Source: Botryllus schlosseri (taxonomy: Eukaryota). From it: a stretch of DNA of 64,000 nucleotides. Within the stretch, counting starts at the first letter, position 1. Each line of letters starts with the position of its first letter. The notes under the pieces were generated by a model. The model saw nothing but the letters and a program-made list of their open reading frames with translations, was not told the origin of the DNA and did no database searches. Below are positions 561 to 63,000 of this stretch, piece after piece. The translations under genes and the position numbers were made by a program. Location: assembly GCA_051294905.1 (NCBI GenBank), contig CM119377.1, positions 2,914,001-2,978,000 on the forward strand, read 5' to 3'.

Positions 561-791
561 CTCCTCCGATAGCGGGCAAAGCTATGCTCTTCATCCCCAT
601 TCCGTCAGCCTGTCTCAATATTTTCAGCAATAGGTCCTCCATGGATTCATTCGTTTTTGGTATCGCCACATGAATGATCTTTTGACATTTCAAGTTGCCT
701 GCGTCGCTGTAACGGATATCGGCGTCTACGGTGCTCAATATGTTTCGAATATCTTCCCCAGCTCCGCTGAATACGGCACGAGACAATGGAC
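561..791 (-). CDS. Macrodomain exon (core, GPLSRAVFSGAG...IIHV...SIALPAIGG)
   Basis: 231 nt, phase 1-1, acceptor ttcgacAG, donor GTTGGG; typical macrodomain motifs. Confidence 0.9.
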
Positions 792-3700: not shown

Positions 3701-6700
3701 TATGGATTAATATGATTATATTCATTATGTCATTGTGATATTATGACCATATATTCATATGATTATATTCTATTATTAGCATTATTATATACCTACTTCA
3801 ACAGTAGTTTTATAATATAGTCCTGAATTTCTTCATATTCTTGTACTGAAGTCATGTATGTGATTTGGTATATCCAGCATAGAAGTCTATTTGTAGACTG
3901 CGTAGCTATGGGTTCTCCTTTGGGACCTATTTCGGCTAACATTTTCATAGGATATTATGAGGGCGAGCTTCTCTCCCAGCGTGTGTCCGTCAAACCATTG
4001 TTGTACCAGAAGATACTTCTGTCACATTCAGGAATGAGTTGGACTGTGAACAATTTCTCATTCACTTAACCTCGCTTCACCTGATTCTGGGAATCACAAT
4101 TTAAAAAGAAAATAACTCATTGTCATTTCTGGACATTTTAGTCGAAAAGCATGATAACGATAAATTTGAAACATACATCTTCAGGAAACTGACATTCACT
4201 GGCCAATACTTTCGTTGGAATTCATTTAGTCCAAGACGCAGAAAAATCAATCTCATAGGCAGCCTCGTGCGTAGAGCGTTGATGATATGTTCGGGTAATA
4301 AACTGAACTTAAAACTTGACAACATCCACAAAATCTTACTTGAGAACGGTTACCCTAGTCACGTTATCAACTGCAGCATAGAGAGGAAAGTAACGCAATT
4401 TAACGCAGAAAAGTCAACAGAGCCTACCGAACGAACAACCAGATATGTATACATCCATCTACCTGGGATTGGTCCTATTTCCCCCCGCTTTGAAAAGCAA
4501 TTGATTTCAGCGCTCAATAAGTGTTACACAGTGACGACCAATGTGATTTTCACGACTACGCAGCGGCTTCCTGCCCTTCAACAGAGCCATGTAGTTTACT
4601 AATTTAAGTGTCACTGTGATTGTGGCTACGTGGGAAGAATGTCAAAGCGCTTGCAGGAAAGCATAAATCAGCATGTCCCTAGATTCATTAGAACACGCGC
4701 ATCACGCTCACCCTTGACACATTCGCTCAAGATTGATGAGGAACAATCAAAGGCCACAAATTCTCCAATTGGCAAACACTTGTTGGATAATCCCGGCCGT
4801 GCGGAAATATTATCGAGACAACAGATTTCGCGTATTCGGAAAGGGTTATTTACACTTTCATTTGTGTGCCTTGGAGTGAACTTTTATCAAAATACACCAG
4901 CGAAGGCGGTGTCAACAAAAAGAGTTCGTGTATCATCTAAAAATAGTACATTGGACGCTCTCGTATTTGACATTTCATGCCGGTGACGTCATATTTTGTG
5001 GTACGATTGTTGATATATGATGTTCTTTTGTATTATCTACTAGTTGCTGACGATTACTCAGGCAAAAATATTCGGGTTCATTTCAATATGAATCTACTAT
5101 TCAATTGTATCTGATACATCTAGTACAAAAGTAACACATGTTGCATGGCATATCCAACACAAAAATCTCGTATGTGACGTGGTCTGACCGACACATATCG
5201 TTGTCGACACACACCTTGGGTAGCTGAACATATATCTCCTCCCCGAATTTCGTATCTGGCAGCCGATCGATTTGCACGACACAATTGCAATTGATTTCGA
5301 TCTCTTCTATGAGATAGCTGGTCGAAGACTCTTTCAAGAACTTATAGACACCGTACTTTTTCATCGATAACTCCTGCACGGATATGGACTCGATGAGAGT
5401 TTTCACTGTAAAAGAAAGCAGCTCATCACATCGCAGACAATTCGAATAAACTTGAAGTAGAGAAGTACATTCACATCATTCCAAAATTCTCTCTTTTCAG
5501 CTTGAAAAATAGGAGTAATTTAAGTATCTGCCAGATTATCTACTGACTGACCGCAAGAGGTGGTCAGTAACGAAATACCTCTACTTTTTAGGAGTATTGA
5601 AACAGGTTTTTCATAAATCCCACTATTTACTCGAGTGGTTATGCTTTTGCCTAGCTCCACTCCTATTGGATAGTTTGCTGAGAAAAACTAATAACTTTTT
5701 GCAGGGTTGTAATGATAATGAGTTATTGGTGACTCGACTTGACTCGGGTTCCTTTTGTCACATGCGTAAAATGACTCAACTCAAGTAAATTTGTGTGTTG
5801 ACTCGACTTGTACTTGAGTAATTGTGCATGACTCGTACCAAGCCACATGACTCGAGACTAAGGGCGGTCAAGACAGACATTTATTTTAAATAATCATTTG
5901 ATTTGAAATTTGACGCAATTCCAACCTGTAGAAGCGAAGGATATTTTTGCGAATCCGATATTTTTATCTGCAATAACTTTGCTTCCAATGAGCAAAAATT
6001 GGTAAACATTGTTCGGGTTGACAGTAGCATTAAAAATTCTTGGCCTTCAATTTTTGGAAAATATTCATAAATTTTCAAACTGCTGCGTGTTCGCATGCAC
6101 CAGTTGGAATCGAGTCAAATTCAGTGTGAAGCATTGTTTTTTTAGCACCCTCACAATTTAATCAGTGAATTACCAAAATCCGAGAAAAAAAACAACTTAT
6201 TTTTGCACAAGCCTAATGTCTGTCTTTCAGTGTCAAGGGAATTTACCTTCGTCGACCTTCCCTTCTTTTCCTGATATCTCAATTCCAGCGTCGTTCTTTT
6301 GATATTTTACGTCTCTCAGAATTTTCCTTTGCTTGTTCGCTTCCAACCATTTGAAGGCGGAATCAGTAGCTTGGACGGTCAACGTTGTGTCCTTATCGAC
6401 ATCGACTGAAAGCGATTCATGCTCCAAGCTCATGCGAGCGCTTTCCTGTTGACAAAAAAGCTTACAGCTTGTCGCAAGACTGTAGGCTTTTACTTAAGTG
6501 AAACCTCAGTATACATTGTGAATGGTGACTGAAGAATTCAGTCCGTGACAGCAGCATTTTAGATAAAATGTAATTGGAAACTAATGATCAGGAGAGCAAT
6601 GATTAACTGATATATTCTCACCTGATTAAGACAGGGCCATAAGATACACCAGAGAACTTACACCAACGAACAGGTTTAGGATTCTAATCGGAAAGGAAAT

Positions 6701-9700
6701 CGAAAAGTACTCGGAAACATGACTCAAGACTGGTGGAGTGGTGATTCAATTTCGTTGATCAGGCTTGGATTAGGATCCCGCCTCAAAAACATGATCGGTG
6801 TATCTCTAATAACTGGGGCTGGAATGAATCGAGTATTAGGCTTCAAATCAAGACGAATACCAGAGTATCACTCCTCCTGCTGTCATACCAGTATGAGTGA
6901 TGTGAAAAGTTTAAATAAGTATCTTTTTATGCGACCACACTGAATATAATGCCAGTTCCACTTTGTAGATCATTTGCGTTTTTTCGACCAGACCTGTATC
7001 CTTGCACATTCTGATAATACTGTGGGTTGAACACAACTTCACAGTTACCGTAAGTCATTTCCACGAACGTATATGCACTACGCATTCTGCGATAACAACC
7101 AATCGAGGTTCGGAAAAAGAATTCAAACAATAGTTTGAGTATAAAATTTAAACGGTCAGTGGAAAGGAACGTATAATTTTGATACTTGAAGATCCTCTCC
7201 CACTACTAGACTCTAATCCAGTGGTTCAGAACCTCGTCTCCAGATATTGTATCCTGCAGCGCACTGCGTGTCGATACCGAAAAGGCACTGTACTGTACAA
7301 GTTTTGAGAGTGATGCCCTTTGTACATTGAAGATGTTTTGAAGCTTTTTGGCCAAAATGATTAACTAAATATACTTTGGAATGCTACAAAATTAAATCGT
7401 CAGAATATTTCTTCATCGTATCATAAAGGATGATACTGCTGAGTGTTTTTACCCCCATTCGTGTTAAAGTTAAGAGCTTGGTGCAGTAATACATTTAATG
7501 TGAGGAAATCTATACCACATTCTTAGTTGATTTCGTAGTCACACAAAGCAAAATCCAATACAATAACTTCCCCGTGTTGCGAATCGCAGAGGAGAATTCG
7601 CGATCTGTATATCGATCTCCAACCAAATGCTATGCGCCCGTAGGCCTTACCCGATGGTTTGATCCCGAAAAAAGCACATACAATTATACAGTGAATTATA
7701 GTCGAGTGGTCTAATAGTGAAGTCCCAACCGGAAATTCGACCACTTAACCATTGTTCTTTTTTTACTAGAAATAGGAGGGCGCAAGACCCAGGCTATTTT
7801 CGAAAGGGGGCGCTGGAGAAAAAAAAGTGAAGAACCACTGTTCTAATCGATAGAATTACTACTAATAACTAGTCCGATTACTAGCGATTTCACAACCCAA
7901 GCAGAATACCGCACCTCTTCGATCATCTCTTGTAACGACTTCTCCGTAGCAGCTACAAGAGACTTGATGCCAACGATGACCAGACTGCTGTCATTTTCAA
8001 CCCAACGCACAGCGACGTTACTGCCCGACTTGACCAGCATCATGCAGAAACCTCTCATCCCTTCGTCGGCATTGATTTTCAAGACTTTGTAGCGGAGAAA
8101 ATACTGCTCTATTTTAACCCTGCAGTCCTCTTCCCACTCATTGGTGGACTCGGTCTGAAGAGAAGATAGTCTGTAACCTTAAGATGATAATCGGTCTGCA
8201 TGTATTATTTCAGAGTCGATCTTCTGCGATTAATGTTAGCACTTTTTTCAGCATCATACCAAACACGGTACTGAATGCAAGTTACATTATCTGCTGACCA
8301 TCTGCACTTCCACTACTTATCAAATGTTTTTAGACTACTTGCACTTCTGCGTAGTCAGTTTTTAGGCAAAAACATTTACCTTTCACGACTTGGATTCTGA
8401 ATAGTATGAAGCAGTTTTGGCACGAGACTACAACGACCCAGTCCCATGACTGTATGTATAAATTTTTTAAGTTTTCCCCTGTGTGTGGAGTCATTAGTAA
8501 GACAAGTTCTTGTAGCACTTGAATCATGGCAAAGTTGTACTTGATTTCAGCAAAAGTTGCAGTAAAAAAGCTGCATTTACAATTTTTTTAGATATATTAG
8601 GGTATGAGATACTCAAAAAGTTGAAGATTTGCACGGTATCTGCCTGTTTCGTTTCTTTCTTCACTATTCAATCGATCATGAATACATCTGTATGTTCTTT
8701 AGGTTTGAAAACTACATGACAGAATTTCATTGTCCGCTCCTGCAGAGCTGTCAAATTTGGTACTTTGCCATTTCATGGACGGCCTGTATAACCATATAAC
8801 AAGTCAAGTACAACACCAAAACCCCCTAGGTCTGCAAACTTGAGCCGAGGCATTGCAGCAAACCTAGTTTTGGCGACTTTAACAAAATCAATAGCCTGAA
8901 AAGGTGACCCAGTGAAAATGTAATGATCAGCAGTCTCCCTTGGGCGTCTCTCAAAGGGGAAAGGACCTAAAATTTAAACGATAGTGAATCAATGATGCGA
9001 TCTATTTAAATACAGTTCAGGCACTGTCGTGCTTGGCTGTGGTTTTAGGTATATAACTTTAATATGCAGCTGATCCATCATATAGCTCTTTGTTGAGCAA
9101 ATCAAAGACAGAACCCGACTAGAAATACTTTTATAGCATGTTCTTCAAATCACGCCTTTACATTTAGCGCAATACTTGATAAAAGCTGCAGTAAAAAGTT
9201 GATGCAAGTAGTTGCAGTATAAAACTTCTTCAAACAGCTTAAAACGCCATACTGCATGCATTCTGAGCATTTAGGAAGGTCCCGGAAGCAGTAAATAAAA
9301 GTTGCAAAAACTTGCCCTAAACCATTAGTCTAGGGCAGCGGTTCTCAACCTTTGTATTTCAATTACTTACGTAGCCTAAGGCCGCATTCTAGGGCATAGT
9401 AGTAATTAGCTAACTGGACACAAAATACCTACTTTAAACTGTCCATATTCATTCCCGGTGAACTCCGGACTATTCTACTTTTCACAACGACCTATTGTAC
9501 GCACCGAAATCCTGAGTGGCAATGTCATGAATAGTTGCTGGGACAGCATATTGTCGTGCAGGCGCAGAGCGTGAAAAATTTTCAGATTCACGAATGAATT
9601 CCGTAATTAATAGTAGTAGTATCACATATTACTATCAAATATTTATCCTTTCCCTGCCCATGTGATCAGATTCATGATGGAGGGAGTGAATGCGTTCGAA

Positions 9701-12700
9701 AATTCAGGGCAAGTTATAAACGCTAATGCATCTTCGACTGGGCCAATTGTTATTAGTCACTTTGTTGAATGCTGTTATTTTTGTTTGGAAATAACAGAAA
9801 ACATTGACAACAGGACACAAATTTCTTTCAAGGTAGGTTGCCCTGAGACTATATTCCTAATGCTGGTAGTGACTACAGAGAGCACGGCGTCGTTCAGTCC
9901 AGCCATGCTAACTGTGATCAGTTTTGGAATTGAATTAAATTGTGTTAATTTAGGGTAGCCTAATTGAGGGCAAAACCGGGCAACCGATATTGCATCCAAG
10001 TCTGTCTTAGGCAGTGCAGTTCGCCAGCTATTACCAGCAGCTACCCAGCACACCGAGCTTTTGGCTACTGCCAAAGCTATGAAGTAAGAAGGACTTACAT
10101 GTGGGAATTGCTCTATATCTTCAAAGATTATAAAAATTTGCTCAAATGAAAATGAAATCAGCCTATACTTAGCTGGAGTTTGAATTTGGCCCCAGGTTGA
10201 GGACCACACGGTCTAGGAAGTCATTAGTCATTTTGCGTTGGTGGAGAAGATGAATCTTACCATTTCAAAAATTAGCCACTTACGATTAACCTCTGAAAGT
10301 ATCCGAATCCTCGGACTTTCATTGAAGTACATTTGATATGTCTCCGAAATCAGTTAAGTTAGGGTTAGATTGTGTATTTATATTTGTATTTTGGTTTCAT
10401 TTTACCTTGTAAGGCATTTTAATATCTTGTTGAAGTTCCAAGAGACCGAAGAAGGTTATGTTTTGACTTTCATTACCTGAAAACCTGTGAGGTCTTGCAT
10501 GAAGTGAATTGCCTGGCAACGCAATACCGATGTTAACTACTTTAACCATTTCTGTCCAGTTGATTGTGAACTTTGGCATAGCATAAAATGCATAACTTAA
10601 ACATAGCAAAACCCAACCTCCAGTATATCTCCATACATCGTGAAAGTATCTCTGGTGTCATCGTCCAAAACAGGGGAGCCGAGCGGCCCCATGTGCTTGA
10701 CCAGATTTTCAAGCTGTTCGGTATTTTCCCCGATGAAAGCCGCGATTTCCGGGATATCACACTGATAACGCATCGTCACGCTTTTCTTTTTGTGCTGCCA
10801 CGAATACGCAGGTTACAGAGACAATCGTCAACCGTGAATCTAATTAAACGAGTGTCTTTATTTTGTACAAAGATACCTTGTCATCATAATGAATATAAAA
10901 GAACTGGAGAGCGCATTGAATCAGCCCCTCCCCAATTCTAGATATGAAAAGTAGAGATTAGGAGTTTTCTAATACAATTTTAGATTTGCCAAATCTAAAT
11001 GCATAAAAGTCTAGTCTTGATTGAGTATTGATTCTAGTTTGAAGAAGCATGCTTTTGAACACGGATATGAATTCTCGAATCCCCATTCGGATTCAAATAT
11101 TCAGATGATGGTCTCGGCCTCGGGGTTGTAATCAAGTCACAAGGCTCCGAGTCACAAGTCGACCTCACTTTTATAGTTTTGACACGAGTCGAGTCGAGTC
11201 ATTTTCAATTCACCACCAAGTCAAGTCCGAGTCCAAGTCATCAAGCAGGGGGTCAAGTCCGAGTCATGGTATTACGACTCGGGTCAGAGTCCAACCATTG
11301 TATTGACGGCTCAGTTTCCAGTTAAAGTCTTGTTAAACCCACTTTTTATAACTCTGTTTGGTGATATCGAATGATTCGCATTGATATTATACTAATTTTA
11401 CTAACTTTAAGCAGTTTTAACAGTTTCTGGTCGCATTTTCAAGCACCAGTACCAATAGACGAAACCCAATAGTGTTGTTACTTTACTATTCTTCGAAATT
11501 ACAATGGAATGTCGATCTTGCCCGTCTGAGTCTTGAGTCATATGACTTGGTTCGAGTCATGTGCAATGACTCGAGTCAAATCGAGTCGCCAGAAAATCCT
11601 GACTCGAGTAATTACAAACCTGCTCGGTCTTGGACTAGTTTGGTTTCAAAAATCCAAATCAGGATTTATAATGAAAGAAATGGAAAAAATTCATTATGAT
11701 GATTCAGTTTCGATAACATCCTTATTTTCAATACCGGTAGTTTTCATGTTTCATTGATCCTAGTTCAATAATTTCCTTGCACAAATAAAGACACCCCTTT
11801 AGACCCGAGACCCGCGCTAATCGGCAATCGGCTCCCACGTGCTGTGCAAACGCCACAACAACATTTCTTTCTTTCCAGCAAACTTGGACAACTAAATAAT
11901 TTTAATTGGACTAATCAGAACGATATACCGCTAATGTAATTCTAATCTATTTCTATGCTCTTAGAATTATAATTAAAATCTTAATTACGGTTTTCCTGAA
12001 AATGCTACAGGATAACTGTATAGTGCAGAACTTTCTTTTTGTCGTATTTCTTTCTAATTCGCATTTTAATTCAATTTCAAAGTTTTTGCAAATTCAGAAA
12101 TTATAATTCTAACCCAACTTGAATAAGCTGGAAATATTCTTTGTCATGACAAAGTCACATTAAATGTCAGAACCATTTTCGGAATATTATCAAACCGATA
12201 GAATTCGCTCACCGTCAAATCATAGAGCACCGCAGCTAGCCGCTTGGCTTCCTTACGAACAAAATCCTTCCATCCGCACACAATTAGACAGCCGTCCTCC
12301 TGAGACCATTCCACAGACACCTCGTCACTGTGACGACACTCCTTACGCATATGGCCGTGGTTCAGCAGCGGCACGTCGAGCTTGGTACAATCAAGTTTTT
12401 GCAAGATTTCTTTGATAGCCTTATTGCAATCGGCTTCCCAGTCTTCCACGGAGTCCACCTGGCAAACCACATATGGTGAGCGATCATGCATGATATTTAA
12501 AGAGAATTTTGAAGAGAAAGTGAAGTTACAATTCAATGAAATTGTTTTCAACCTGTGGAATGGTACATACTACTGCAGATAAAAAATTGAGCTTTTTTAC
12601 TTTTCTGAAGTGGAGTAATTCAAACAAACTTGATATGACATTGAGAACAGTGGATGCCTGACTCCTATCATTGCGAGACATTTATAAAAACTTGTTGAAC

Positions 12701-15700
12701 ATACGACACAGCGCTAATAGTAGCTTTTACAATAATTTTGTCCCACACCATATCAAGTGTATTGCAGTATTCACCTCACTGGCGACGCATAGTTCGTAAT
12801 TGTCGGGTGGTCCGCGATCTCATCTAATCTAGAACTCTATTAGGACTATGCTTCAACAATTAGATGCTTAATCTCACACATTCACCGATACACGGCCACA
12901 CAACTTTGTTCAACAATTTGACGGTTTAATATGAACAAAGAACAAAGAAATAGCAGCAGGTTATCTGAAGAACACTGCATTCAAACGGCAATCTACAATC
13001 TACGCGAATATTTTTTGCTAAATTCCTCCAACACAGCCTGGCCAGGCTTGCGCGCGGCCAATTGGTGACAAGCGTGTTGCCAATTAGCGAGATTTGGCTG
13101 TGCACTGCAAAAACTAACGAGACTCGATCTCGCTGAGATAATTGCGAAATTAAGTCCTTGATTACCGTGCCGGCTATCGTTGCTAGCCTGATTTACCACG
13201 TCTCCAACAAGCCTAGTTCCGCCGTTTGAAGAAGCGCATCTGCAATAGGCCCGTTACGAATTATACCATCGATGGCATGCACAATTGCATCTGCTTTACC
13301 TGGCCCGCACCATATCATCGTTAGTCTACACAACAATCGCATCTGCAATATGCCTGATACGAAAGATTTTGTCACAAGCCTAACGATCGCGTCTCGGGCC
13401 TAGCATGCTTTGGCTCCTATCTCTCGATGGATTGTATGCGGATTAGCGATTGTGATTAAAGAGTGACATCGCTTAACTGAATGACATCGAATGTCCGCAA
13501 TCGAACGCAAACATTTGCATGAGTACATACCAAATTGATTTTCCCTAATATTCGAACACAACCATCGGAAGATGTTTGTCAATGCTTGAGTTACGAAAGA
13601 TGAAAAAGGTTTGAAATTGAACCACCTGAAATCGGTGCCATTATAGAAAAGATTCCATACCAACTCGGACATTTTGACTTGTGCAAATCGTCACCGAGGC
13701 TACGTAATGTGCGTTGATATGCACGTAATACGAGTTGAGAAAGCTTGCATATTTAATTGTTCGCGATAGATTAGGGACTCGCTAATTGACAGCACTTCCG
13801 GACGCGTTAGCAAGCTTATCATACGCGTAAGTTCGTCTACGCGAGGCAAGCTTATCATACGCGTAAGTTCGTCTACGCGAGGCGATTGTATAATCGTCAT
13901 TTACGCATTACTTAACCCTAATGAATCAATGCCATAAAAATCAAAACCCCGCCCTTTTTATTTCAATCCCTCCCTTATTCTTTGGCTCGCTACGCGCCTG
14001 AGGAGGTACAGAACTTCAATATACTATTGGATAGTATATTGATATTGAAATGAAACTGAATATTTTCAGCTGACACCCGTCAGCATACAATTGGATTTTG
14101 AATTTAATCTCTTTGAATCCATTTTGTGTGCAAATAACTTTTGCCAACCGGCACCAGAGAAGTATTTGAGTTATAATAAATGTATTTTTGGATGTTGTGA
14201 TGAAAGCGATCCCACAATAGATAAATTGAATAGTATATTCATATTGAAATGAAGCCGAATATTTTCGGACAACGCTCGTCAGGGGTAATCGTCAGCAACT
14301 AGCAGAGAATTGGAACGAACATCGTATATCAACAATCGTATCACAAAATATGACATCACCATGGTCACAAAATATGACGTCACAGTGTTCACAGGGTAAT
14401 CGTCAACAGCCAGTAGAAAATTGAAAAAAACATTGTATTTCAACAATCGTATTACAAAATATGACATCGCCGTCATCAAGAAATACACCAGCCAAGGCTT
14501 CGTCAACAAAAGGAGTTTGTGTATAGATCTGCCATCTAAAAGTAGTACATTGAATGCTCTCTTATTCGAAATGTCCTGCTGGTGACGTCATATTCCAGAT
14601 ATTTAGAGTATGGAGAGAATCATACTTCTCAGAAACGTTACACCCATCTTCACATTGAGGGATTTCTGCATAAACCAAATAAAACGGAACTGTTTTCGAT
14701 TGTCAATTCAAAACTCAACCAAAATCGATAACAAGATTTAACAGCACGAAAATCAGAGGATATGTGTCAGCGTATAATTAGACATGGAAATATTCCAAAT
14801 CCGGAATCTGTTTCGACCACACTAATAATACAGTTGCATGAATTGAGTAACTGCGAGCATACCTCAAGGATCTCGGACTGAAAAGCAACGTGCTCGCTGT
14901 GTAACGTTACGTGTCCGCTGCCAGATAAGCCCTCGTCTTCGATATTGAGATTTCTCCTCATGAACGAAATAAGATACTTGTCGCAAGCAATCTGGACAGC
15001 CACAGATTGCTTTCGGTTCTGGAACGAAAGTGAGAGCAAAGATTGAAATTAAATGTAAACCGCAAACTTTCCAGACTATACCAAGAAGATATACAAGCCA
15101 GTATTGCTGTCGGTTGATAGTTCAGTAGAGTATCTCACCTCACAATCTACCATGATTGCTACGGATACAGACAGACATAAGTTTATTTCCATAAATGCGG
15201 GATGATAATAACAACACATTGGTATATATGCTATAAATAAAACCATATGCAGTTCCGTTTAGTTGTAATTTTATCCTATACGAAAACATCAGAAGATTGC
15301 GATACAATGAAAAGATAGGAAGGTGTCGAAACGGCTGTGAGTAGCATTTGAAATCAGACAATATATATGTTATGCCATATATGTTGTAATCACTAATCAG
15401 TACAATATAATAACAACAACATATCTGTATGTAATACATATAATCGTACATATTGATATGTATATACATAGCTTATAGGTAAGTAGTAAGGTGCTGTAGG
15501 AGGCATAGATATAGGAGGTACCTCTTATTTCATTGTTTATATATATTCGGATATTATTTGTATGGGAGCTTCCCTGGTCACCTACATCTTCGCATTTTTG
15601 ATCCAAGCTTTTAATCATCATAAAATCGGAATGTGGATTTCGATATTTTTCAGAGTCAGTTGGACTTGGATCTCGAAGCAGATTACAGTCTGTTATCTAG

Positions 15701-39700: not shown

Positions 39701-42700
39701 AACGTCGACAATGTGTGAAGAGTCTTTACGCAACAGACTTACTCGTGTAGTAGCACCAAGTTCATCTATCGCAGTGGAATGATGTTTGAAAGTGTAAATA
39801 TAGAGTGGGGATGTGTGTTTCAATTGCGCACACTTTATGCAAAATCATTTCCGATGTATACAGAAAATAATTCGTGAGGGGTACGCATTGGAAAAAGTTT
39901 GAGAACCCCTGATTTACTTGTTTCGTTGATCATAAAATCTGATATAAATTGGTGCGGTAAAAGAAATTTGGGCCAAGTCCGACATCATGACCCAATGTCT
40001 GAGAACCACAATGAAAGCTGTGAATATGTACCTGTTCGTTTATTGCCAGCTTTGCCTTTTTGATATCATCTCTTCTTCCCGTCAGCTTCAAATAATTCTG
40101 TCTGCACCAACCCACGTTAACCCCAGTCCGGGCGGACACATTCTGCAATTGGGACAACGTCTAGTAACTATATGTGTCACAAACATGAGTAAAATGCTTA
40201 TTACCTGCAAAACTTCATGAGAAATTTTACGGCAATTGTCAGGTTTTATGTACATTTCCTTGGACTCCATCTTAACAAATATGTAAAATACATTCGTTGT
40301 AAACTTTGTTACAGCAACTAAACACACAATGATTCTCTTGCACTGAAATAATAAAATATAAAGCAGGAAGAGTACAGATTCAAGTCACTATGCATTAGCA
40401 AACATGATACATTCTTGTTACAACTTACAGCTTCTGACAGACAAAATTGACCTCAGTTGAAAAATAATTATCAAGCATCTGGCATTTCACTCATATCAGC
40501 TCGCGTACCAAATATCAATATTGTCAGCGTCAACAAGATTCAGAACACACAAAAGCAAACATAAATTCAACTACATAGCGCAGGTCACCTTATACAAAAA
40601 TAAATAACAACGCCACACAAGATATCTGCCGTTTGAGTTGAGTACTCAAAAGCGATACAAAATAGGAAGTTGCTGCTGACCAGTTAGCCTACAGACATCA
40701 AAATGAAGAGAAAATATTATTATGACATAAGATGTGCTTGCTACTTGGAATCATTGAAGTGTAGAGAATCAACAAGCCCATTCTTCACACTAAATGGTTT
40801 CAGTATTGTGCGAGCATTGTGTAATTTAGTTTTAAATGTATGCCCACCTTGAATTTTCAATTCATTAGGGCGCTGCAATTGCTAATAAGTTCACAGAGCG
40901 CAACATTTACAAGAATAGTTTGGGTAGAGGTTGGTAGGTAACCCGGTTATGAGTATGAGAGTATCCAACAACATGACTCTACTAATGTACTATAACTTTG
41001 TCACACATTACAACACTTCTCTCGCTTCATACCTAGTTAAACGTGTGTCTTGGGGATGTGTTTTTAATGTTACTGGATCCTTGATAAAATTGCTAGGTTA
41101 CCTGAAAAACGGTCACAACAAATTTGTCTCAATCCCCGCCTGTAGAAGCATTGCTATTAGAGGAGTACAGTTTGGATGTATTAAATTAAAATAAATAGAT
41201 TTTTTTTTAATTGTTTGGTTGTCTAAAAAACGTGCATAACAAATTTGGCTCAATTCCGATCCGTTGAACAGTGGTTTTCAAACATTTTTAGAGACGCCCC
41301 CCTTGATGCTAGTGAAAAATTTTGCGCGCCCCTATCGCCATATATAACAAAATTAAAAAGAGCATCCATAATGTTTGCAATCGCAACACATAGTTTTATG
41401 GTATCGAATGCTGAGACTGATGAGAGACTTACCAAATATGAAGTTCGGATTATAAACAGAGCAATAATTACGAGCTGGAGGTAAATCGCGCAGGCGATGA
41501 AAAAGCTTTCAATTGAATATTTTGTCAAAAATAATCATGCGAAGTGGTTGCACATAACATTTAGATATTTTAGCGAGTTTAGTGTCTAATCCCTTCTATT
41601 ACCATACTTGAGCTTGGCTGAACGGGGTGCTAAATAAAAAACCAATGGAGAGGCCAGCACGCCACTCAAACTTGGCACTTCGTCACGGAACAAACAATTT
41701 TCTTTAACGGTCGCAGGTGTTCGGCAAGAGAATAAATAATTTAAACGCATACTTTGTGCTGCCATAAAATGCGCTTCTTAAGAGTGTCATTTACAAAAAA
41801 AAAGTGTCCTTATTGAGTATATTAGGAGGGGCTACTTTAACGTTATTGTAAGCCACTTCGATTTAAATCCACGTTTTTTAGATTAAAACATATTATACAT
41901 GGCTTATGACACAACCTTATAAAGATATAACTTATTCCTACATGAATTTATGTCATTCAAGTTTCTACTCACTCTGCACTGGTGCTTGACAGACAAGCCC
42001 TAAAAGCGTCATCAAACAGCTACAAACAATCAAACATTCACCAGTTACTCTTAATTCAGATAATAATAAGATCTCGGTTGCTTTCACACCTTATTTAACG
42101 TCCACTTGCAAAGTAATAATTATATTTATTACACGAGCTTTCGGAGCGCCGCTCCTTCATCAGGTGTTAAAGTGAAAGTCAGAGACATCTTTTGATCGAC
42201 GCAAAGTCCGGTTTCAGTCAAAATTCAGAATCAGTGTTGGGATGGTACGGCGCAATCAAGACATTTAAATCGTAATTTAATGAAGATTACTGCCTTTGTT
42301 GAAACCTGGAAGTTTCAGCACAAATCAAACTCATTCCGAGTTCAAGGAACCATTTTCTCTCAGGCGGCTTCACGCCCCCAGTTTGAGAACCACTGCCATA
42401 GAATCTAACGTATTTGAGAATAAATTGAAGATTTGAAAAAAATAGTATTTACGGCGGAAAGTTCTATCATTATTTATTGTTTTCTACTGCTACTATTTTC
42501 TATTATATTATTTATTAAATCCGAAACTTTCTCCTCTAATGCTTCTCCTGTACAGGTTGGAAATGAGCCAGATTTTGTGTGCTGCGTTTTTTTAGGCACA
42601 CTATTAATTTATCCAATACCCAGTATAATTTGAAAAGAAATAGTTAATTTAGAGCAGCCCCAGTATGTATCTATCATCTCAGCATCAGACTCATGCACGC

Positions 42701-45700
42701 CTACTCCTATTGCAGATTTATATGCGAGTAATCCAGTCAATATCATGGCAAAGTCTCATTCAATATGTAATGCCAACAAAATCCAAGCTAACCTGGTTCA
42801 CTTTCCCTTTCATCTGATGTATCTTCTGTTCCACATCTTTCACTCGACCACTGACCGATATCGTTAATACCCCTTTCAAGCTCGAGAGCAGATGCACATC
42901 CACGGCAGCATCATTATGTTCAGCAGGGTCAAACGTATCAACGGTCTGAGTACGCACGGTGAATTGTGAGAAGAATTCGTCTAGGATTCTCTCGCATTCC
43001 TTGCGCCAATTTCCTGCAGCCTGCAAGATAATCATATGATATGAATCATTACGAAGTCGCGTGAATGCAAAAAAATGATAAACAAAAATTCAAGTATAAC
43101 AAAATAAAAAGACACACAAGTGTTATTTCCAAAAATGAAGTTTATTTTAGTGAAATGACGATCAGCGATACGGCCGTTACATCGTCATGTCAGCTGGTAA
43201 CATCATACAGTCATATATGTTATAAATGCAAATATATCTTGCAAAAAGTATGATGAATTAATATGTATAACATCAAGTGCGAACGCAATACGCATATTAC
43301 ATTATTATTAGGGCAAGTTTTTGTTACATTCAAATCGGTGGAAAGTGGCATTTATGGACAAGTTCCTTGAAATTATAAGGGTACGAGATACTCAAATCGT
43401 TCCGTATCCAAGGCACTCTAACACACTCAGTGTTGGCGACTTCAACAAAAATTGACCCAGTGAAAATATTAATTTCGTCGGTCTAGCCCAGTGGTTCCCA
43501 ACGTGGGCGATATCACCCCCCAGGGGGCGATTCCGCGGTCTAGGGGGGCGAAAATAACGAAGGGGGCGATAGGGGGGCGAAAGCGGACGAAGGGGGCGAT
43601 AGGGGTGAAAACAACGAAGGGGGCAATAGGGGGGCGATGGCGCGTTAAAACGGCTATATTGGAGTAGGGACCGTAACTACCGCACCCCAAACCCCCCAAT
43701 TGGTGGTGGGGGGCCCGAAATCATAGGAAGCCCAAAATTATTTTGTGAATTAACATGAATGATAGAGTAATTTTTTAGAAATTCATTCGACTTTTTCAAA
43801 AAATTTTCGCGCGGCGCGCAATTTAATATTTTCATGTATCTTGATGTTGGGGTCCCCGCCACCCAACAAAAATACGCATAATTTATGGAAATGGGAGGCT
43901 TCGGCGTCGGCCATTACTGCGCCACGACGCACCAAGACATATGAAGTTAGAGGCCATGTAACATGCGACTCCGAGAAGTGTGCCAGAACGATCAGCAGCG
44001 AGAAGACCTTGGCCGAAAAGAAATGCCCTTGTGCTGACCGAAAACTTCGATGTATTTACATATATGTTAAATTGTCCATAGGCGCCTTAATGGCTGGCGT
44101 CGAATGTTTCTGTCCTGGCGACCTTAACCCTACAGGACAAATGCCATCCCCACAAGGAAAGAATTATTCGCCAGTAAAGAAATACCAATATATGAAATCA
44201 TGTGAGTCTTTTAGTTTGGTACGTTTTGACGATTTCCATATCTTCTGACATAGCAGATATAGGAGGTCACGAAATAGCATCATGTAAAGAAGTCAATATC
44301 AACGATTCCGCCCGAAGATGTTTAATTATTATTTAGGGGTCCTACCTTTTTCAACATACCACATCGACCATATTGACCAATTCAAACATGAATTATATAA
44401 AATTGTCGCGCCTCGCCCGTTTAGGCGAAATACCGTGACTCACCAAACAGTACATGAAATAGGGTATAGCTGATATGTAGCGACAAAAAGCCCACTGGCT
44501 GAGGGGGGTCTGGGGTTTGGTTTATCACCCTATGCAGCCAAAGACCAACGTTTTTTCGGGTAGAGGGGGGAGCTGACGAAGTGCTGTTTTTCGGTTCCCA
44601 ACTGGGGGGCGATGATCGGTGTGGAGCTTCAAAAGGGGGCGATGAGTCGGAAAAGGTTGGGAACCACCGGTCTAGCCTGAATGCACGTCAAATCAGAAAC
44701 GACCTCCAATTTAAACTACAGTGAAATAATCAAGTGATCTATTTACATATAGTGCCAAATATTTCTACTAAAATGTTAGTTTCATGAAAAATCGAAAAGA
44801 AAACTTGCAAAAAGTTGCAATATAAGATTCATTCAAACAGCTTAATGCACCATACTACGTAATTTTTGAGTATTTGGATAGCTGCCAAAAGCTGTAAAAA
44901 ATGTCGCAAAAGTTGCAAAAACTTGCCCTAATTATTATCTTACGTGTACATGTACGCGAATTTACTGCTGTCAATCAAACTAGATGAAACAAGTAACAAG
45001 TAAGGTACCTATACAAATAACTTTAACAAGTAAAAAAATAATTAAAAAATAAGAAGCAAACGACAACAAATTTACTGTTATATTTTTCATGAACTGTAAC
45101 AGTTGAGCTAAGAGGAAAATTCATACTGGTGTTGAGCTTAAAGTAGAACAGACATAAAAATTTTGACTCGTCAGAGTTGCAAATTTTTGTGTGCAGATTG
45201 GCCAGAGTCGTACTCATTATAATATTTATTGCATTGAGTTTGTACTTTTTCTTATCTGCGTGAGTAGGGTTCGAACTTGTGGAATTTACTGACGGTATCA
45301 ATGGACCTCGACTAGAGAGATTGTTGATCTACAATATGAAAAACAATTATCACTTTTTCCAAAATATAGCTTCAACGAGCTACAATAATTAGATAAATGT
45401 AACGTCGAGCTGGTGTCAAAGTCGCAAATGTTGGCAAGCAAGAGTATTAGACTCTCGTAATTCAAGTAATCTGTGGTGCAATTCACTAGCCAGAAGCTTG
45501 TTCTCGAGGCAATGTTAGGATTCCAGTGTTTACAAAATGAAAGATATCATGAAATTGTGATGTCACAAGAATCTGGACCAGCGCAGAAATGTGGCTTTCA
45601 GTTCATTATAGTAGGGAAAATGTTATGTAATTATTTATGGTAGGTTACAAAGTTGGATGGGTCTTACGTTCAGCGTGGACTGCATTGAAACCCCACTTTG

Positions 45701-48700
45701 AGTTACTAATAATAGCCAGTTTTCAAATTTTTAACAGTGATCTTCACTAGATACCTAAAGTCATTATTAGCACTATACACAGTATACAGAGCTACCCAAC
45801 GCCAATGAATAAAATCACCTACTTGAGTAGGAAAATTAGCTAGCGGCTTAATTGCCACATGATCCACTGCAATGTTCACATTCGCATTTGCCTTTTTCAT
45901 TTCCAGTTCCAGTCTCCCTAAATCTTCAGGTCTCAACGATATGTATTTCATGATTTCCTTTTGAAATATATTGTCCTTTCCTTCTGGGTGTTGCCATTTA
46001 AAAGGTTGCAGTGCTGTAACAATTTTATACCGCGTTACAATATATCTCAAAGGAAATCGTAAAACACTATAGTTATGATATAGAAGCTGCATGCGAATGA
46101 TCCTAACCGAAATGTCACTCGGAAATTTTTGACACGACACAAATTTCCAACAGTGGTCATAATATTGTCAATTAAAGAATACATGCAGAGTTGTTTCAAC
46201 TGAAGGCATAAGTAACACAGTTAGTTCGTGAAAAGACCATGGTCGATATTACCGCATTTCTGCAAAGCGAGTAACAACTTTCAAAACCCCATAGCTAGGG
46301 CAATTTTTTTTTTGACCTAAAAAACGGAAGATTTTGACCTAAAAAATCTAAATTTTGACCTTTTTTGACCTAAAAAAACTGAAATTTGACCAAATTTTTA
46401 CCTCAAGTATGCAAATTAGGTGTTTTCGCATATAATGTTAAAATTGTACTACTTATCTTCATTTCTGGTTGGAACTGTCTGTCCTTACAAAGTAGATTGG
46501 CCTGAAAAAACGTTTTTGGCTCAAAAACTGACAGATTTTTACATGAAAAACTAGTCTTTAACGAAATCTGGCCCTATGAAGAATTCCAGTAGTTACATTA
46601 CGTATTCTGGTGGAAATAATTAAAATTTGTTGTAGTACAACGAAAGATCCTTTCCTACATTCTCGGGTAGAAAGTGTCTGTCCTTACTACGTAGCTTGCC
46701 AAGAACGGAGATAGAACGTTCAACAGCAGCATTTGTTGGCTGACAACACTCAAGTTGTGTGCACACTGCTGGTGACAAACCGTCTTGCTTCATTCTGACA
46801 ATGTTGTCTATATCACAATTTTTCAGCTTGCGCTTCTTGATATAAGAACCATGCAATGTCCAAGCAGTCTTGCTTCAGCTAGGATATTGCGGTACGTTGA
46901 TCATAAAACCATGTCACTATTTGTTTCATTTGACCATTTATGATTCACAATGAGCAGACGATGGTCCGTTTACAACGGTAGGCCTATAAAGTAGGCTACA
47001 AGCTGTAAAATATCAAATGATAAGTTCACCGACAGCGCAAAATCTACGATACAAACGAAATGCAGAGGTCAAAAAATGTTTGACTTTGTAAACAATTTTG
47101 ACAAATTTTGACCTAACGCTACAATTTTGACCTAATTTTGACTTTTTTTGACATGTCAAAAAAAAATTGCCCTACCCATAGCACATGCTACATTGCTACA
47201 CACAACTATTTATGGTATTAATATATGCCTACTCGCTACTCTGATGAGTGATGACCTTCACTATTGATTGACTTGCGATCGGGAAGGGGTATCATTGATT
47301 CCAGTAATTCGCAGCACTTTGGTAGCTATCATATGAATAAAACTTTAATTTTGTTCAAAACTGCGGGAAGCTGTAGCATACTAAAAACTGTGACTAGCCC
47401 ACCACTGAAAAATCTCAAATATTGTGGTATAAAAATGTCACTTATAACTCACCATTGCTAGCATCATTGACTTTCAAAGAATTGGCAGATCCTAAATAGA
47501 AGCCAATACTGTATATAAATAAATTGGAGGAATAGATGATAATCTACAGACACAACCGAAAACCAGTACCTGGTTGATTCAAAGGTACTATGAAACTTCA
47601 ACAGTAGAGCATATGTACAAAGAATAAGCACTCCTTAAAAGAATTTAATCTTGCTTATAAAAAAACTGCTCAAGAAACCAACATTAAGTAACACAATTTC
47701 GATATTATTTTCATTTATATTCTATTGAAGTTCTGTACGTCTAAGAAGGTCTTCAAATATTTATATTCTACAAAGTGATATTGCTACCTTTTCTCTGCTT
47801 TTGCTTAGCGCCTTTATTGGCCGGTGTCGCTTTCAGATTGTTATTTGGACCATCAACTGAAAATAAGATAGAAATTAGGTTATAATCAATAATAATTTCG
47901 ATAAAAAGTTGCAACAATTATATTCATTTCAATTGTTACCATTTAAAATAACAGCGTAGCTAACATCTGTCAGAATATTGAAGCGGTACAAACGCAAAGA
48001 AGCAACAAAAATTGCATATAAATCAGTCAAGTAGACAATAAATTATGCATTGCAAAATGTACGAATGTACAAAAGGCCTGAAAACAGTAAAGAAATTTTA
48101 ATCTTCAATAGATTATATTCCAAATACAATCGAGTACGACGATTGGTGATTATTGAAATTGCTCATTGGATCAGTCATTTAATTACATAGCTTCAAAGAC
48201 CGACAAGGAACCTCCCACAAGACAATTTTATCGTCCATATCCGAATATATATACCAAAATTTCATTAATTAACTCCATATGACATCATGTTGAGATTACA
48301 ACACAACGATATGAAGTATAAACCACACCAATTACTGTGGCAAATTTTTCAATTTACAGTTCGAGCGGACCATAAAGACGTGTTTATAAATATGGCATGC
48401 TGACAAAAACTTTGCCCGTAATCAATCCATATTCTATCACAGTAACAGAACAGTAACCATTAATACCAACCGAAGAATATTGTTTTGATGGATGGAAGCT
48501 CACAGAATGTAATGACATTTTTATGAAAATACAAAATTTCCAACTTCAGTATTACTTCCGGTATGTATTGTAGGGTAATTAGCAAATACTGGCAGTGCCT
48601 TACCCATATTTATTTCAAAACCTCAATAGAAATATCAGTCAGTAGATAAAGTGATAACAAGGTCTAAATATCATTCAACAAAAATTGAGCATTGCGAGGA

Positions 48701-61930: not shown

Positions 61931-63000
61931 ATATAGACAGACACCTTCGATTGTTTTCAGAGCCGGAGCTGGAGCCGGAGCAGTGGTAATAATACGGCTC
62001 CGGAGCTGGAGCTGGAGCTAATGTATGATAGAAGAAAGCTCCGGAGCTGGAGCAATGCAAATTTACGGCTGCTCCAAAGCCCTGGTCGGAACGGATATTT
62101 TAGTCATCAACATCCCAAAGTTTGCGGTCAAGCTAATCAAATTTTCGGTTGGTTTTGCAAGTTCACAATAAATTACCTGGCTAATTTATTTCTTGATATT
62201 ATAACTAATTTCGATAATTACCTCGCAGGGCAGTCAAAACCTCGCTGGTTGGTCGCCCCTGATTTGGTTGGTCCGCATGCTTGCCTGAAATATCGCGTGC
62301 ACCAGGCCAGGACTGAAATCGTCACTGGCTTGAACTATCGATTCTATACAGCAGGTCAGGCGTGATATCGTCACTAGCCTGAACTACCGAGTCTACAACA
62401 AGGCCAGACTTGATATCGTCACTAGCCTGAACTATCGAGTCTACTCTACGTCTACAGCAGTCCTCGCACTATAGAGTACTCGCACGATTTGCCTGCTATC
62501 TCAATTTATGCCATTGCTGTGTCATACTGGCTTAAGACTGACAACGTGAAATTGAATAACTTTGGCTCTGCGCAATTGGTCGCAATTCGCAAACCGACTA
62601 GAAGGGGCGCCAAAAGATGAGACATGCCTGAATCACTTGAAATCGATGCCATTACAGAACAGATTCCACAGCAGACTATATCATTTTGATTGGTGAAAAA
62701 GTTCGTCGTCACGTAGGTTGCGAAATGCGTATTCAATTGTTCGCGCGCGTGTTGGTGAATAGTGAATATTTGGTACCGTATTGAAGCGAGATAGAGGAAT
62801 CGCTAATTGACGGCACCGCCGGACTTGCTGGCAAGCTTACGCGTACTGATACGCGTATCTTCGTCAACACGCGGACCCTTGTCTTATCCATGTATTATCG
62901 TCATTGACGCATGTACTTAACCCTAATAAATTAATGCTACCTTGGTAAATTTCAAACAATTTGAAACCCCTTCCTTTTTCGTATTGCCACCCCGTGTAAA

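What the first reader, a model, noticed from the sequence alone, without database searches (positions are those of the whole stretch)
5215..46040. PARP14 RRM-KH-(macro) module recurs several times: one giant protein or a tandem cluster
Seen: the 'W..(D/E)C…F' exon occurs at 42793-43020, 16016-16228, 12213-12458 and 7910-8154, usually followed by a 'K.SV' exon (15018, 10794). RRM-like traces are near 45.4, 25.1, 9.7 and 8.4 kb, and macro-like sequence is at about 9.9 kb and 0.6-3.3 kb. No clear intervening stop/polyA/ATG sets were found. Inferred: serial internal duplication or a multi-copy PARP14-like cluster of the kind seen in immune gene families.
Basis: partly seen in the sequence, partly recalled or inferred. 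Interest (0 to 1): 0.7.

Follow-up and report, generated by a model that had tools for sequence, protein, structure and literature searches.

The report
Repeated KH domains in PARP14-like gene
The recurring exons are copies of a small RNA-binding-type (KH) domain pair strung many times along a minus-strand PARP14-like immune-type gene; they are domain repeats inside a protein, not a cluster of separate genes.

Summary
The four 'W..(D/E)C..F' exons are real minus-strand exons with AG/GT borders. Three borders sets are exact; the 8-kb exon ends at 7915, not 7910. They are homologous to each other: leave-one-out profiles recover each copy at E 3e-6 to 3e-12, and the next frame scores 0.13.

The exon folds with pLDDT 96 as a type I KH domain. 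Its best match is human PARP14 KH2. The W helix is the last helix of a KH domain begun in the preceding 'K.SV' exon, so each K.SV + W..DC exon pair encodes a two-KH unit like PARP14 KH1-KH2 (TM 0.64).

A 956-aa protein from a relative's RNA contig maps collinearly from 24.9 to 0.5 kb. It holds the three downstream pairs in one reading frame, ending in a single reader-type macrodomain. These pairs are therefore internal repeats, older than the species split.

Upstream (46-26 kb) lies a further KH array. All 35 curated exons chain into 1,653 stop-free codons holding about 20 KH-like domains. No RRM was found, and no macrodomain at 9.9 kb. WWE and the PARP catalytic domain would lie off the window.

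Open point: the relative's reading frame starts at the 24.9-kb exon, so a second transcription start there is possible. The scan noted the 26-40 kb KH array in another note on this same DNA.

The parts
45823..45983 (-). Exon encoding a KH1-like half-domain. Together with the next exon it forms the first two-KH unit.
   Evidence: AG/GT borders. Weak Pfam KH_PARP14_1, E 0.017, below cut-off. The K.SV profile does not recognise it.
42793..43020 (-). W..(D/E)C exon, copy 1 (KH2-type domain)
   Evidence: Exact AG/GT borders, 228 nt. Recovered by the leave-out profile at E 3e-6. Genomic ORFs P0002 and P0010 from a relative are 58-66% identical.
40205..40270 (-). Tentative 66-nt exon: N-terminal half of a KH-like domain
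   Evidence: AAG acceptor, GTAATA donor, length divisible by 3. Read from the sequence only.
40032..40142 (-). 111-nt exon: C-terminal half (beta-beta-alpha) of a KH-like domain
   Evidence: AG/GT borders. Weak Pfam KH_PARP14_3, E 0.11. Included in the best exon chain.
38350..38460 (-). 111-nt exon: C-terminal half of a KH-like domain
   Evidence: AG/GT borders. In the best exon chain.
37095..37190 (-). 96-nt exon of the '102-type' (strand plus W-containing helix), super-repeat unit 0
   Evidence: AG/GT borders. Aligns with 31244-31345 and 28106-28207.
36225..36323 (-). 99-nt exon (beta-beta-alpha, 'GHP' motif), unit 0
   Evidence: AG/GTGAGT borders. Aligns with 30611-30709 and 27752-27850.
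35216..35428 (-). 213-nt whole-KH exon with a degenerate GXXG loop
   Evidence: 39% identical to the 33.6-kb KH exon, E 2e-8. AG/GT borders.
33440..33646 (-). 207-nt whole-KH exon with a canonical GKNG loop
   Evidence: Pfam KH_1 E 1e-12. PDB sequence hits to vigilin, PCBP2 and IMP KH domains.
31521..31628 (-). 108-nt exon (beta-beta-alpha), unit 1
   Evidence: 41% identical to 28823-28930. AG/GT borders.
31244..31345 (-). 102-nt exon (strand plus W helix), unit 1
   Evidence: 48% identical to 28106-28207, E 6e-8. AG/GT borders.
30611..30709 (-). 99-nt exon (beta-beta-alpha), unit 1
   Evidence: AG/GTAAGA borders. Aligns with its paralogues.
29803..30009 (-). 207-nt whole-KH exon with a degenerate GXXG loop, unit 2
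   Evidence: 43% identical to the 33.6-kb exon, E 6e-17. Same 207-nt length.
29006..29080 (-). Tentative 75-nt exon: N-terminal half of a KH-like domain, unit 2
   Evidence: Strong acceptor, weak donor, length divisible by 3. Read from the sequence only.
28823..28930 (-). 108-nt exon, unit 2
   Evidence: Paralogue of 31521-31628. AG/GT borders.
28106..28207 (-). 102-nt exon, unit 2
   Evidence: Paralogue of 31244-31345. AG/GT borders.
27752..27850 (-). 99-nt exon, unit 2
   Evidence: AG/GTAAGT borders. Alignment.
27188..27292 (-). N-terminal half of a canonical KH domain (GTKG loop)
   Evidence: Pfam KH_1 E 9e-8. AG/GT borders.
26969..27082 (-). C-terminal half of that KH domain
   Evidence: AG/GT borders. 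In the best exon chain.
26270..26362 (-). 93-nt exon (beta-beta-alpha)
   Evidence: AAG acceptor, GTAAGT donor.
25946..26044 (-). 99-nt exon, the last exon upstream of the possible second start
   Evidence: AG/GT borders. Same 99-nt length as its paralogues. The donor score is ordinary for this gene.
24749..24865 (-). Exon where the relative's reading frame begins: first half of a KH-like domain
   Evidence: P0001 residues 1-39 map here, with its Met on codon 1 of the exon. Good acceptor at 24866.
24048..24131 (-). Second half of that KH-like domain
   Evidence: P0001 residues 41-73 map here. AG/GT borders.
23485..23586 (-). N-terminal half of a canonical KH domain (GKDG loop)
   Evidence: P0001 residues 78-108, 52% identical. 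Pfam KH_1 E 4e-4 here and 6e-10 in P0001.
22873..22995 (-). C-terminal half of that KH domain
   Evidence: P0001 residues 109-154 map here. Acceptor and GTGAGT donor seen in the sequence.
20816..20992 (-). K.SV-type exon, copy 1
   Evidence: P0001 residues 182-236 map here. K.SV profile E 6e-24, though it is a training member. 36% identical to its positional orthologue.
16016..16228 (-). W..(D/E)C exon, copy 2
   Evidence: Exact AG/GT borders. P0001 residues 222-307 map here. Leave-out profile E 2e-6.
14863..15018 (-). K.SV exon, copy 2
Evidence: P0001 residues 307-360, 48-50% identical.
12213..12458 (-). W..(D/E)C exon, copy 3 (the copy that was folded)
   Evidence: AF2 pLDDT 96.2. Best match human PARP14 residues 381-456, TM 0.70. 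Leave-out profile E 3e-12.
10618..10794 (-). K.SV exon, copy 3
   Evidence: P0001 residues 436-495, 48-52% identical. Starts at 10794.
7915..8154 (-). W..(D/E)C exon, copy 4
   Evidence: P0001 residues 494-576, 41% identical. Only the donor at 7915 keeps the frame. Leave-out profile E 9e-11.
6247..6445 (-). Exon for a further KH-like domain
   Evidence: P0001 residues 590-644 map here. AG/GT borders.
5215..5405 (-). Exon just before the macrodomain. It may be the N-terminal part of a split KH domain; this was not tested.
   Evidence: P0001 residues 643-702, 38% identical, E 1e-15. AG/GT borders.
3176..3278 (-). First macrodomain exon
   Evidence: P0001 residues 703-738, 64-68% identical.
561..791 (-). 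Second macrodomain exon. The domain continues beyond the window start.
   Evidence: Pfam Macro E 5e-7. PDB best match is PARP14 macrodomain 2. P0001 residues 738-820, 58% identical. Nothing in 1-560 continues the domain.

Best explanation
The window carries the 5' and middle parts of a minus-strand PARP14-like gene. Its protein is mostly a long chain of type I KH domains, ending within the window in the start of a reader-type macrodomain.

The 'W..(D/E)C..F' exon encodes two things: the last helix of a KH-like domain begun in the preceding 'K.SV' exon, and then a complete second minimal KH domain. Each exon pair is thus a two-KH unit equivalent to KH1-KH2 of human PARP14. That unit occurs three times in tandem (20.9/16.1, 14.9/12.3 and 10.7/8.0 kb). 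A related form occurs once near the 5' end (45.9/43.0 kb).

Between them lies a second kind of repeat, made of four exons of 207, 108, 102 and 99 nt. The array grew by tandem duplication of exons whose lengths are multiples of three, which keeps the reading frame. The duplications are old: each copy has its own orthologue in a relative.

Inferred function, by analogy with PARP14 and vigilin and not shown here: the few KH domains with an intact GXXG loop bind single-stranded RNA or DNA; the many loop-less ones act as spacers or protein-contact modules; the macrodomain reads ADP-ribose. Most likely all 35 exons belong to one transcript. Whether WWE and a PARP catalytic domain follow cannot be seen from this window.
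For: - Borders: all four W..DC exons and the K.SV exons have AG/GT borders.
- Homology: leave-one-out profiles give E 3e-6 to 3e-12, against 0.13 for the next frame.
- Fold: the W..DC exon has pLDDT 96 with order alpha-beta-alpha-beta-beta-alpha. Its best Swiss-Prot model match is human PARP14 residues 381-456, TM 0.70, followed by FMRP KH0 and vigilin KH domains.
- Pair: the K.SV + W..DC pair from the relative has pLDDT 91 and forms two KH-like domains. It matches PARP14 residues 320-461 with TM 0.64, and vigilin KH4 at Z 8.4. Residues 316-468 of PARP14 are KH1-KH2 according to PMC10450202.
- One reading frame: P0001 (956 aa, from a 3,289-nt RNA-type contig) maps collinearly onto 14 exons from 24856 to 553, including three W..DC and three K.SV exons and the macrodomain.
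- Age: positional orthologues are 36-52% identical, paralogues 14-36%.
- Canonical KH: Pfam KH_1 hits at 33.6, 27.2 and 23.5 kb.
- Macrodomain: Pfam Macro hit, with PDB best matches among PARP14 and PARP15 macrodomains.
- Relatives: other proteins with this module sit in loci whose ORFs run KH, then Macro, then PARP, with PARP14-type RRMs upstream in one of them.
- Chain: the 35 curated exons give 1,653 codons without a stop, and 30 consecutive exons have lengths divisible by three.
- Junction: the intron at 26044/24865 is 1,080 nt, ordinary for this gene, whose median intron is 819 nt.
Against: - The relative's reading frame starts with a Met aligned to the first codon of exon 24749-24865. 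About 200 nt upstream of it in that contig carry stops in all frames and no detectable coding similarity. A transcript may therefore start there, and the upstream array could be a separate gene or a separate isoform.
- Because nearly all exons have lengths divisible by three, an unbroken frame does not prove one transcript.
- No RNA data from this species were available.
- The PARP14-specific Pfam KH models hit only below their cut-offs.
- The count of about 20 KH-like domains rests partly on reading secondary-structure patterns by eye in the 46-26 kb part. Several 'half' exons there have no identified partner exon.
- P0001 ends 135 aa after its single macrodomain, with no WWE or PARP domain, so the family assignment is by resemblance only.
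Confidence: 0.75

Rival explanations
1. There are two transcription units. An upstream KH-only gene or isoform runs from 46 to 26 kb and includes W..DC copy 1. A separate gene like P0001 (KH array plus macrodomain) starts at the 24.9-kb exon, from its own or an alternative promoter.
For: The reading frame of P0001 begins exactly at the codon aligned with the first codon of exon 24749-24865, and in-frame stops lie upstream in its contig. No coding similarity was found in those 200 nt. The window has an ATG seven codons into that exon.
Against: Only 1,080 nt separate the flanking exons, an ordinary intron length here, and that would have to hold a 3' UTR, a promoter and a 5' UTR. Exon 25946-26044 keeps a donor at the same position as its 99-nt paralogues, and exon 24749-24865 has a good acceptor. 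There is only one chance-level AATAAA in the interval. P0001 may be a paralogue or a short isoform. A KH1-KH2-type N-terminus at 46-43 kb followed by a macrodomain at the 3' end matches the domain order of one PARP14-like protein.
Confidence: 0.3
2. The window holds a tandem cluster of several PARP14-like genes, each W..DC exon marking one RRM-KH-macro copy.
For: PARP14-like genes are often found as tandem duplicates in other animals, according to the review PMC13224862. The module occurs four times on one strand.
Against: Three of the four copies lie in one reading frame of a relative's RNA-derived protein, only about 140 residues apart. No RRM and no macrodomain lie between the copies. No stops interrupt the chain. 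The copies are 14-27% identical to each other but 39-43% identical to their positional orthologues, so they are old, individually conserved domains rather than gene copies.
Confidence: 0.03
3. Part of the array, for example the 46-26 kb section, is a decayed, non-functional relic of exon duplications and is skipped in the mature mRNA.
For: Some KH 'half' exons (38350-38460, 31521-31628, 26270-26362) have no identified partner exon. A 50-nt candidate partner at 31.8 kb would break the frame. There is no expression evidence for this part.
Against: Every listed exon is open and has AG/GT borders. Paralogous exons keep the same lengths (207, 108, 102 and 99 nt) despite only about 40% identity, which points to long-term selection.
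Confidence: 0.07

Closest known systems
Human PARP14 (UniProt Q460N5): three RRMs, KH1-KH6, a split KH7 enclosing three macrodomains, KH8, WWE and the ART domain (PMC10450202)
   Same: The W..DC module is the best structural match to PARP14 residues 381-456 (KH2), and the exon pair matches residues 320-461 (KH1-KH2). The KH domains lie in line and are followed by a macrodomain. The macrodomain's closest solved relatives are those of PARP14 and PARP15.
   Different: About 20 KH-like domains instead of 8. The KH1-KH2-like pair is present four times. No RRM was found in the window. WWE and ART were not seen; they would lie off the window, and they are absent from P0001.
Vigilin / HDLBP / Scp160 (14-15 tandem KH domains)
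   Same: A long in-line array of type I KH domains mixing canonical and degenerate copies. Vigilin KH domains are the best solved-structure matches: Z 8.4 by structure, and E 9e-6 by sequence for the canonical KH exon.
   Different: Vigilin has no macrodomain. The W helix/KH2-type module points to PARP14 rather than vigilin.
PARP9 and DTX3L (KH domains with macrodomains, or with RRM and RING-DTC)
   Same: They carry KH-like domains of the PARP14 type. DTX3L residues 234-364 appear among the fold matches. Like PARP9, the relative's protein combines KH and macrodomains without an active transferase.
   Different: PARP9 has two KH domains, two macrodomains and an inactive ART domain. No RING or DTC domain is present here.

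Membership tests
PARP14-like (macro-PARP, clade 3) | C-terminal ADP-ribosyltransferase (PARP catalytic) domain | not testable with these tools
   The gene runs off the window start, and nothing in 1-560 continues it. The relative's protein P0001 ends without this domain. Other relatives' loci do have PARP ORFs downstream.
PARP14-like (macro-PARP, clade 3) | WWE domain before the catalytic domain | not testable with these tools
   It would lie off the window. It is absent from P0001.
PARP14-like (macro-PARP, clade 3) | One or more macrodomains of the PARP14/15/9 type | tested here: met
   Pfam Macro E 5e-7 on exon 561-791. The best PDB sequence match is PARP14 macrodomain 2. The orthologous domain in P0001 is closest to PARP15 macrodomain 2 and PARP14 macrodomain 3, at E 1e-14 to 1e-16. 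Only about two thirds of one domain lies in the window.
PARP14-like (macro-PARP, clade 3) | In-line array of PARP14-type type I KH domains (KH1-KH2 pair) | tested here: met
   Met by fold: TM 0.70 to PARP14 residues 381-456 and TM 0.64 to residues 320-461, from models with pLDDT 96 and 91. By sequence, only sub-threshold Pfam KH_PARP14_1, _3, _6 and _8 hits. Relatives with this module carry KH_PARP14_1 and _2 (P0029) or _1 and _6 (P0041); only the KH_PARP14_1 hits (and P0029's _2) reach Pfam's cut-off.
PARP14-like (macro-PARP, clade 3) | N-terminal RRM domains | tested here: not met
PARP14-type RRM ORFs from locus L004 find nothing in the window. RRMs could still lie in undetected small exons or upstream of the window.
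PARP14-like (macro-PARP, clade 3) | A split KH domain that encloses the macrodomain(s) | tested here: inconclusive
   Exon 5215-5405 sits directly before the macrodomain, and the tail of P0001 after its macrodomain reads like a strand plus helix. Neither was folded, and Pfam gives nothing.
Type I KH domain | beta-alpha-alpha-beta-beta-alpha fold with a GXXG loop | tested here: met
   The fold is met for the W..DC and K.SV modules, in a minimal form with one helix and no GXXG loop. The full motif is met for exons at 33.6 kb (GKNG), 27.2 kb (GTKG) and 23.5 kb (GKDG), with Pfam KH_1.
Vigilin family | 14-15 KH domains with no other domain; conserved vigilin KH sequence | tested here: not met
   A macrodomain follows the array. 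Pfam KH_Vigilin hits are only weak, E 0.05-0.1.

The most novel reading that the evidence does not exclude
All 35 exons make one protein with about 20 KH-like domains, roughly two and a half times human PARP14 and more than vigilin. It has no RRM cap and feeds a single reader-type macrodomain. As in the relative's mRNA and (per an unchecked scan note) another locus of this genome, it may lack the transferase end. It would then be an RNA-scaffold type ADP-ribose reader derived from PARP14, not an enzyme.
Probability: 0.25. Interest if true: 0.55.

Novelty: new variant of a known kind. Interest (0 to 1): 0.35.

Why it matters
PARP14 is a major interferon-induced antiviral ADP-ribosyltransferase. 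Its KH array was recognised only in 2023, and what that array does is still unknown.

A natural variant in which the KH1-KH2-type pair is present four times, with each copy conserved separately between species, argues that these loop-less KH domains are individually selected working parts rather than filler. It also supplies a set of diverged natural sequences for testing what the pair binds.

The gene is a clear example of a domain array built by duplicating exons whose lengths are multiples of three. For annotation, it warns that such repeats can be misread as tandem gene copies.

Tried and rejected
- Remote profile search. Only about nine of the 54 hits are true relatives. Most of the rest that were scanned are bacterial Big_2 or immunoglobulin repeat proteins that match the strand pattern 'V.V.W...L.V.G'.
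- Word-indexed search with P0001 found only P0001 itself.
- The contigs holding P0002 and P0010 were too short, and no DNA was returned.
- DNA-level alignment of the relative's contig to the window gave only five short matches, inside the most conserved coding exons, so its 5' UTR could not be placed on the window. A translated comparison of that UTR with window exons was also blank.
- K.SV profile: no sequence-level link to the 45.9-kb KH1-like exon.
- hhalign of the 102+99-nt exon unit against the W..DC module aligned only the generic C-terminal half, with probability 22%. It was therefore not counted as a further copy.
- A 50-nt candidate partner exon at 31.8 kb was rejected because it breaks the frame.
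- Pfam on flagged frames and on 46-64 kb frames found no RRM and no other gene. No tRNA genes were found.
- Literature searches for PARP14 in tunicates found nothing relevant.
- The KH exon's strong phmmer hits to Photorhabdus lectins were judged a repeat-motif artefact.
- My exon-chain predictor also picked spurious small exons and part of the Harbinger ORF. These were removed by hand.

Full report
**What the window is.** The window is eukaryotic DNA of about 40% G+C with no N. All coding signal relevant to the finding lies on the minus strand.

**Observation.** The fourth starts at 8154. Only the donor at 7915 (GTGCGG) keeps the frame with the next exon; the donor at 7910 does not. The 'K.SV' exons start exactly at 15018 and 10794, and a third copy lies at 20816-20992.

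A profile of the four W..DC exons finds only those four copies in the six-frame translation. Profiles built without a given copy and its orthologues still recover that copy as the best remaining frame. The E-values are 3e-6, 2e-6, 3e-12 and 9e-11 among 1,255 frames, with the next frame at 0.13 or worse.

The other parts of the observation fail. Frames at 45.4, 25.1, 9.7 and 8.4 kb give no RRM or any other Pfam hit. PARP14-type RRM ORFs from a relative's locus hit nothing in the window. Nothing macro-like is found near 9.9 kb. Macrodomain coding is real only at 3176-3278 and 561-791.

**What the module is.** I folded the 12.3-kb exon with an alignment of 14 natural sequences. The model has pLDDT 96.2, with the order helix, strand, helix, strand, strand, helix. 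Its best match among Swiss-Prot models is human PARP14 residues 381-456 (TM 0.70, 77 residues), followed by FMRP KH0 and vigilin KH domains.

A K.SV + W..DC pair taken from the relative's protein (P0001 residues 300-445) folds with pLDDT 91 into two KH-like domains. The K.SV exon gives strand-helix-strand-strand, and the domain's closing helix is the 'W..(D/E)C..F' helix at the start of the next exon. The rest of the W..DC exon is a second, complete minimal KH domain.

The pair matches PARP14 residues 320-461 with TM 0.64, and also vigilin, DTX3L and RBM43. A second aligner puts vigilin KH4 on top at Z 8.4, rmsd 2.2 Å over 68 residues. Residues 316-468 of PARP14 are KH1-KH2 according to PMC10450202. 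That paper describes PARP14 as three RRMs, KH1-6, a split KH7 enclosing three macrodomains, KH8, WWE and ART. The repeated unit is therefore a PARP14 KH1-KH2-type pair, not an RRM-KH-macro module.

**One protein or many genes.** The remote profile search found few true relatives. The best is P0001, 956 aa, called on a 3,289-nt contig of a public sequencing run. Because that one open reading frame spans what are 14 exons here, the contig is spliced RNA.

P0001 maps collinearly onto the minus strand from 24856 to 553. In order it covers:
- a KH-like domain;
- a canonical KH domain;
- three K.SV + W..DC pairs;
- two further exons;
- the macrodomain.

The three copies at 16, 12 and 8 kb are thus parts of one reading frame. 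Each window copy is 36-52% identical to its positional counterpart in P0001 but only 14-36% identical to the other copies. The triplication therefore predates the split of the two species, and each copy is kept separately.

Other proteins carrying the module have Pfam KH_PARP14_1/_2/_3/_6 and Macro hits. They sit in loci where a KH ORF is followed by Macro and PARP ORFs, and in one case is preceded by RRM_PARP14_3 ORFs. This ties the module to PARP14-like genes.

**The whole array.** I ran an exon-chain search using splice scores and codon usage and then curated it by hand. The result is 35 exons from 45983 to 561, all with AG/GT borders, giving 1,653 codons without a stop. Two of the exons are tentative.

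Thirty consecutive exons have lengths divisible by three. From 40 to 26 kb the exons form a second repeat with lengths 207, 108, 102 and 99 nt. Paralogous exons there are 39-48% identical. An unchecked scan note on this same DNA describes that array as well.

Three KH exons keep a GXXG loop and hit Pfam KH_1. The others are loop-less. By pattern I count about 20 KH-like domains. This number is approximate, because several half-domain exons lack an identified partner, and a profile-profile comparison does not link the 102+99-nt unit to the W..DC module.

**The open point.** P0001's Met aligns with the first codon of exon 24749-24865. About 200 nt upstream of it in its contig, after an adapter remnant, there are stops in every frame and no detectable coding similarity. 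A start at this point is therefore real in that transcript.

In the window that exon has a good acceptor directly after an in-frame stop, and an ATG seven codons in. The interval to the upstream exon is 1,080 nt, ordinary against a median intron of 819 nt. It holds a single AATAAA, which is the chance density. The upstream exon keeps its donor at the same position as its paralogues.

I therefore favour one gene (about 0.6-0.65), possibly with an internal alternative start. Two adjacent units remain a serious rival (about 0.3). An unbroken frame is no proof, since nearly all exons have lengths divisible by three.

**The 3' end.** Only about two thirds of one macrodomain lies in the window, and nothing in 1-560 continues it. 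The orthologous domain in P0001 is closest to PARP15 macrodomain 2 and PARP14 macrodomains 3 and 2 (E 1e-14 to 1e-16). It is far from the hydrolase-type macrodomain 1, so it is probably an ADP-ribose reader. P0001 stops 135 aa after its macrodomain, without WWE or a catalytic domain. Whether this gene has them cannot be told from the window.

**Mechanism (inferred).** By analogy with PARP14 (PMC10450202, PMC13224862) and vigilin, the array is likely a long scaffold for single-stranded nucleic acid, for protein partners, or for both. The three GXXG-bearing domains are the likely nucleic-acid contacts. The macrodomain would couple the scaffold to ADP-ribosylated targets. The array grew by tandem duplication of frame-neutral exon sets.

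**Verdict.** The feature is real and is explained by the known KH architecture of PARP14-type proteins, here in an unusually expanded form. It is a new variant of a known kind and of moderate interest.

Noticed in passing
window 18725-20014 (-): An intact 430-aa Harbinger/PIF-type transposase ORF (Pfam DDE_Tnp_4, E 2e-33) sits in the 4.6-kb intron between exons 20816-20992 and 16016-16228, on the same strand as the host gene. My exon-chain predictor wrongly pulled part of it into the gene model.
   Followed up: partly
window 1988-2263 (-): A 92-aa open frame with a sub-threshold PHD/C1-type zinc-finger match (E about 1e-4) lies in the intron between the two macrodomain exons. It is probably a fragment of a mobile element or an unrelated relic.
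   Followed up: no
window 4105-4983 (+), 37692-38097 (+), 62965-63713 (+): A repeated element with open frames 47-74% identical between copies and no Pfam match. One copy lies in an intron just upstream of the macrodomain exons. Other short repeat families are scattered across 51-60 kb and in several introns.
   Followed up: no
window 30088-30709 (-): A local tandem duplication of about 297 bp lies in the intron just downstream of exon 30611-30709. Translated copies are 79-93% identical. It copies intron sequence only.
   Followed up: no
window 47453-51652 (-): The exon-chain search linked five very short exons (34-69 nt), four of which carry one spare base at each border (the first, 51614-51652, does not), encoding a basic, low-complexity stretch, to the 45.9-kb exon. 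Their scores are low, and no start codon was identified.
   Followed up: partly
window 33440-33646 (-): The canonical KH exon gives strong phmmer scores (E down to 5e-18) against Photorhabdus propeller lectins. The matches come from a short motif repeated in every blade of those proteins, so this is an artefact and not a relationship.
   Followed up: no
L001 1-24: The relative's RNA contig begins with a sequencing-adapter remnant (transposase mosaic end). Its 5' end is therefore a library-fragment end and not a mapped transcription start.
   Followed up: yes
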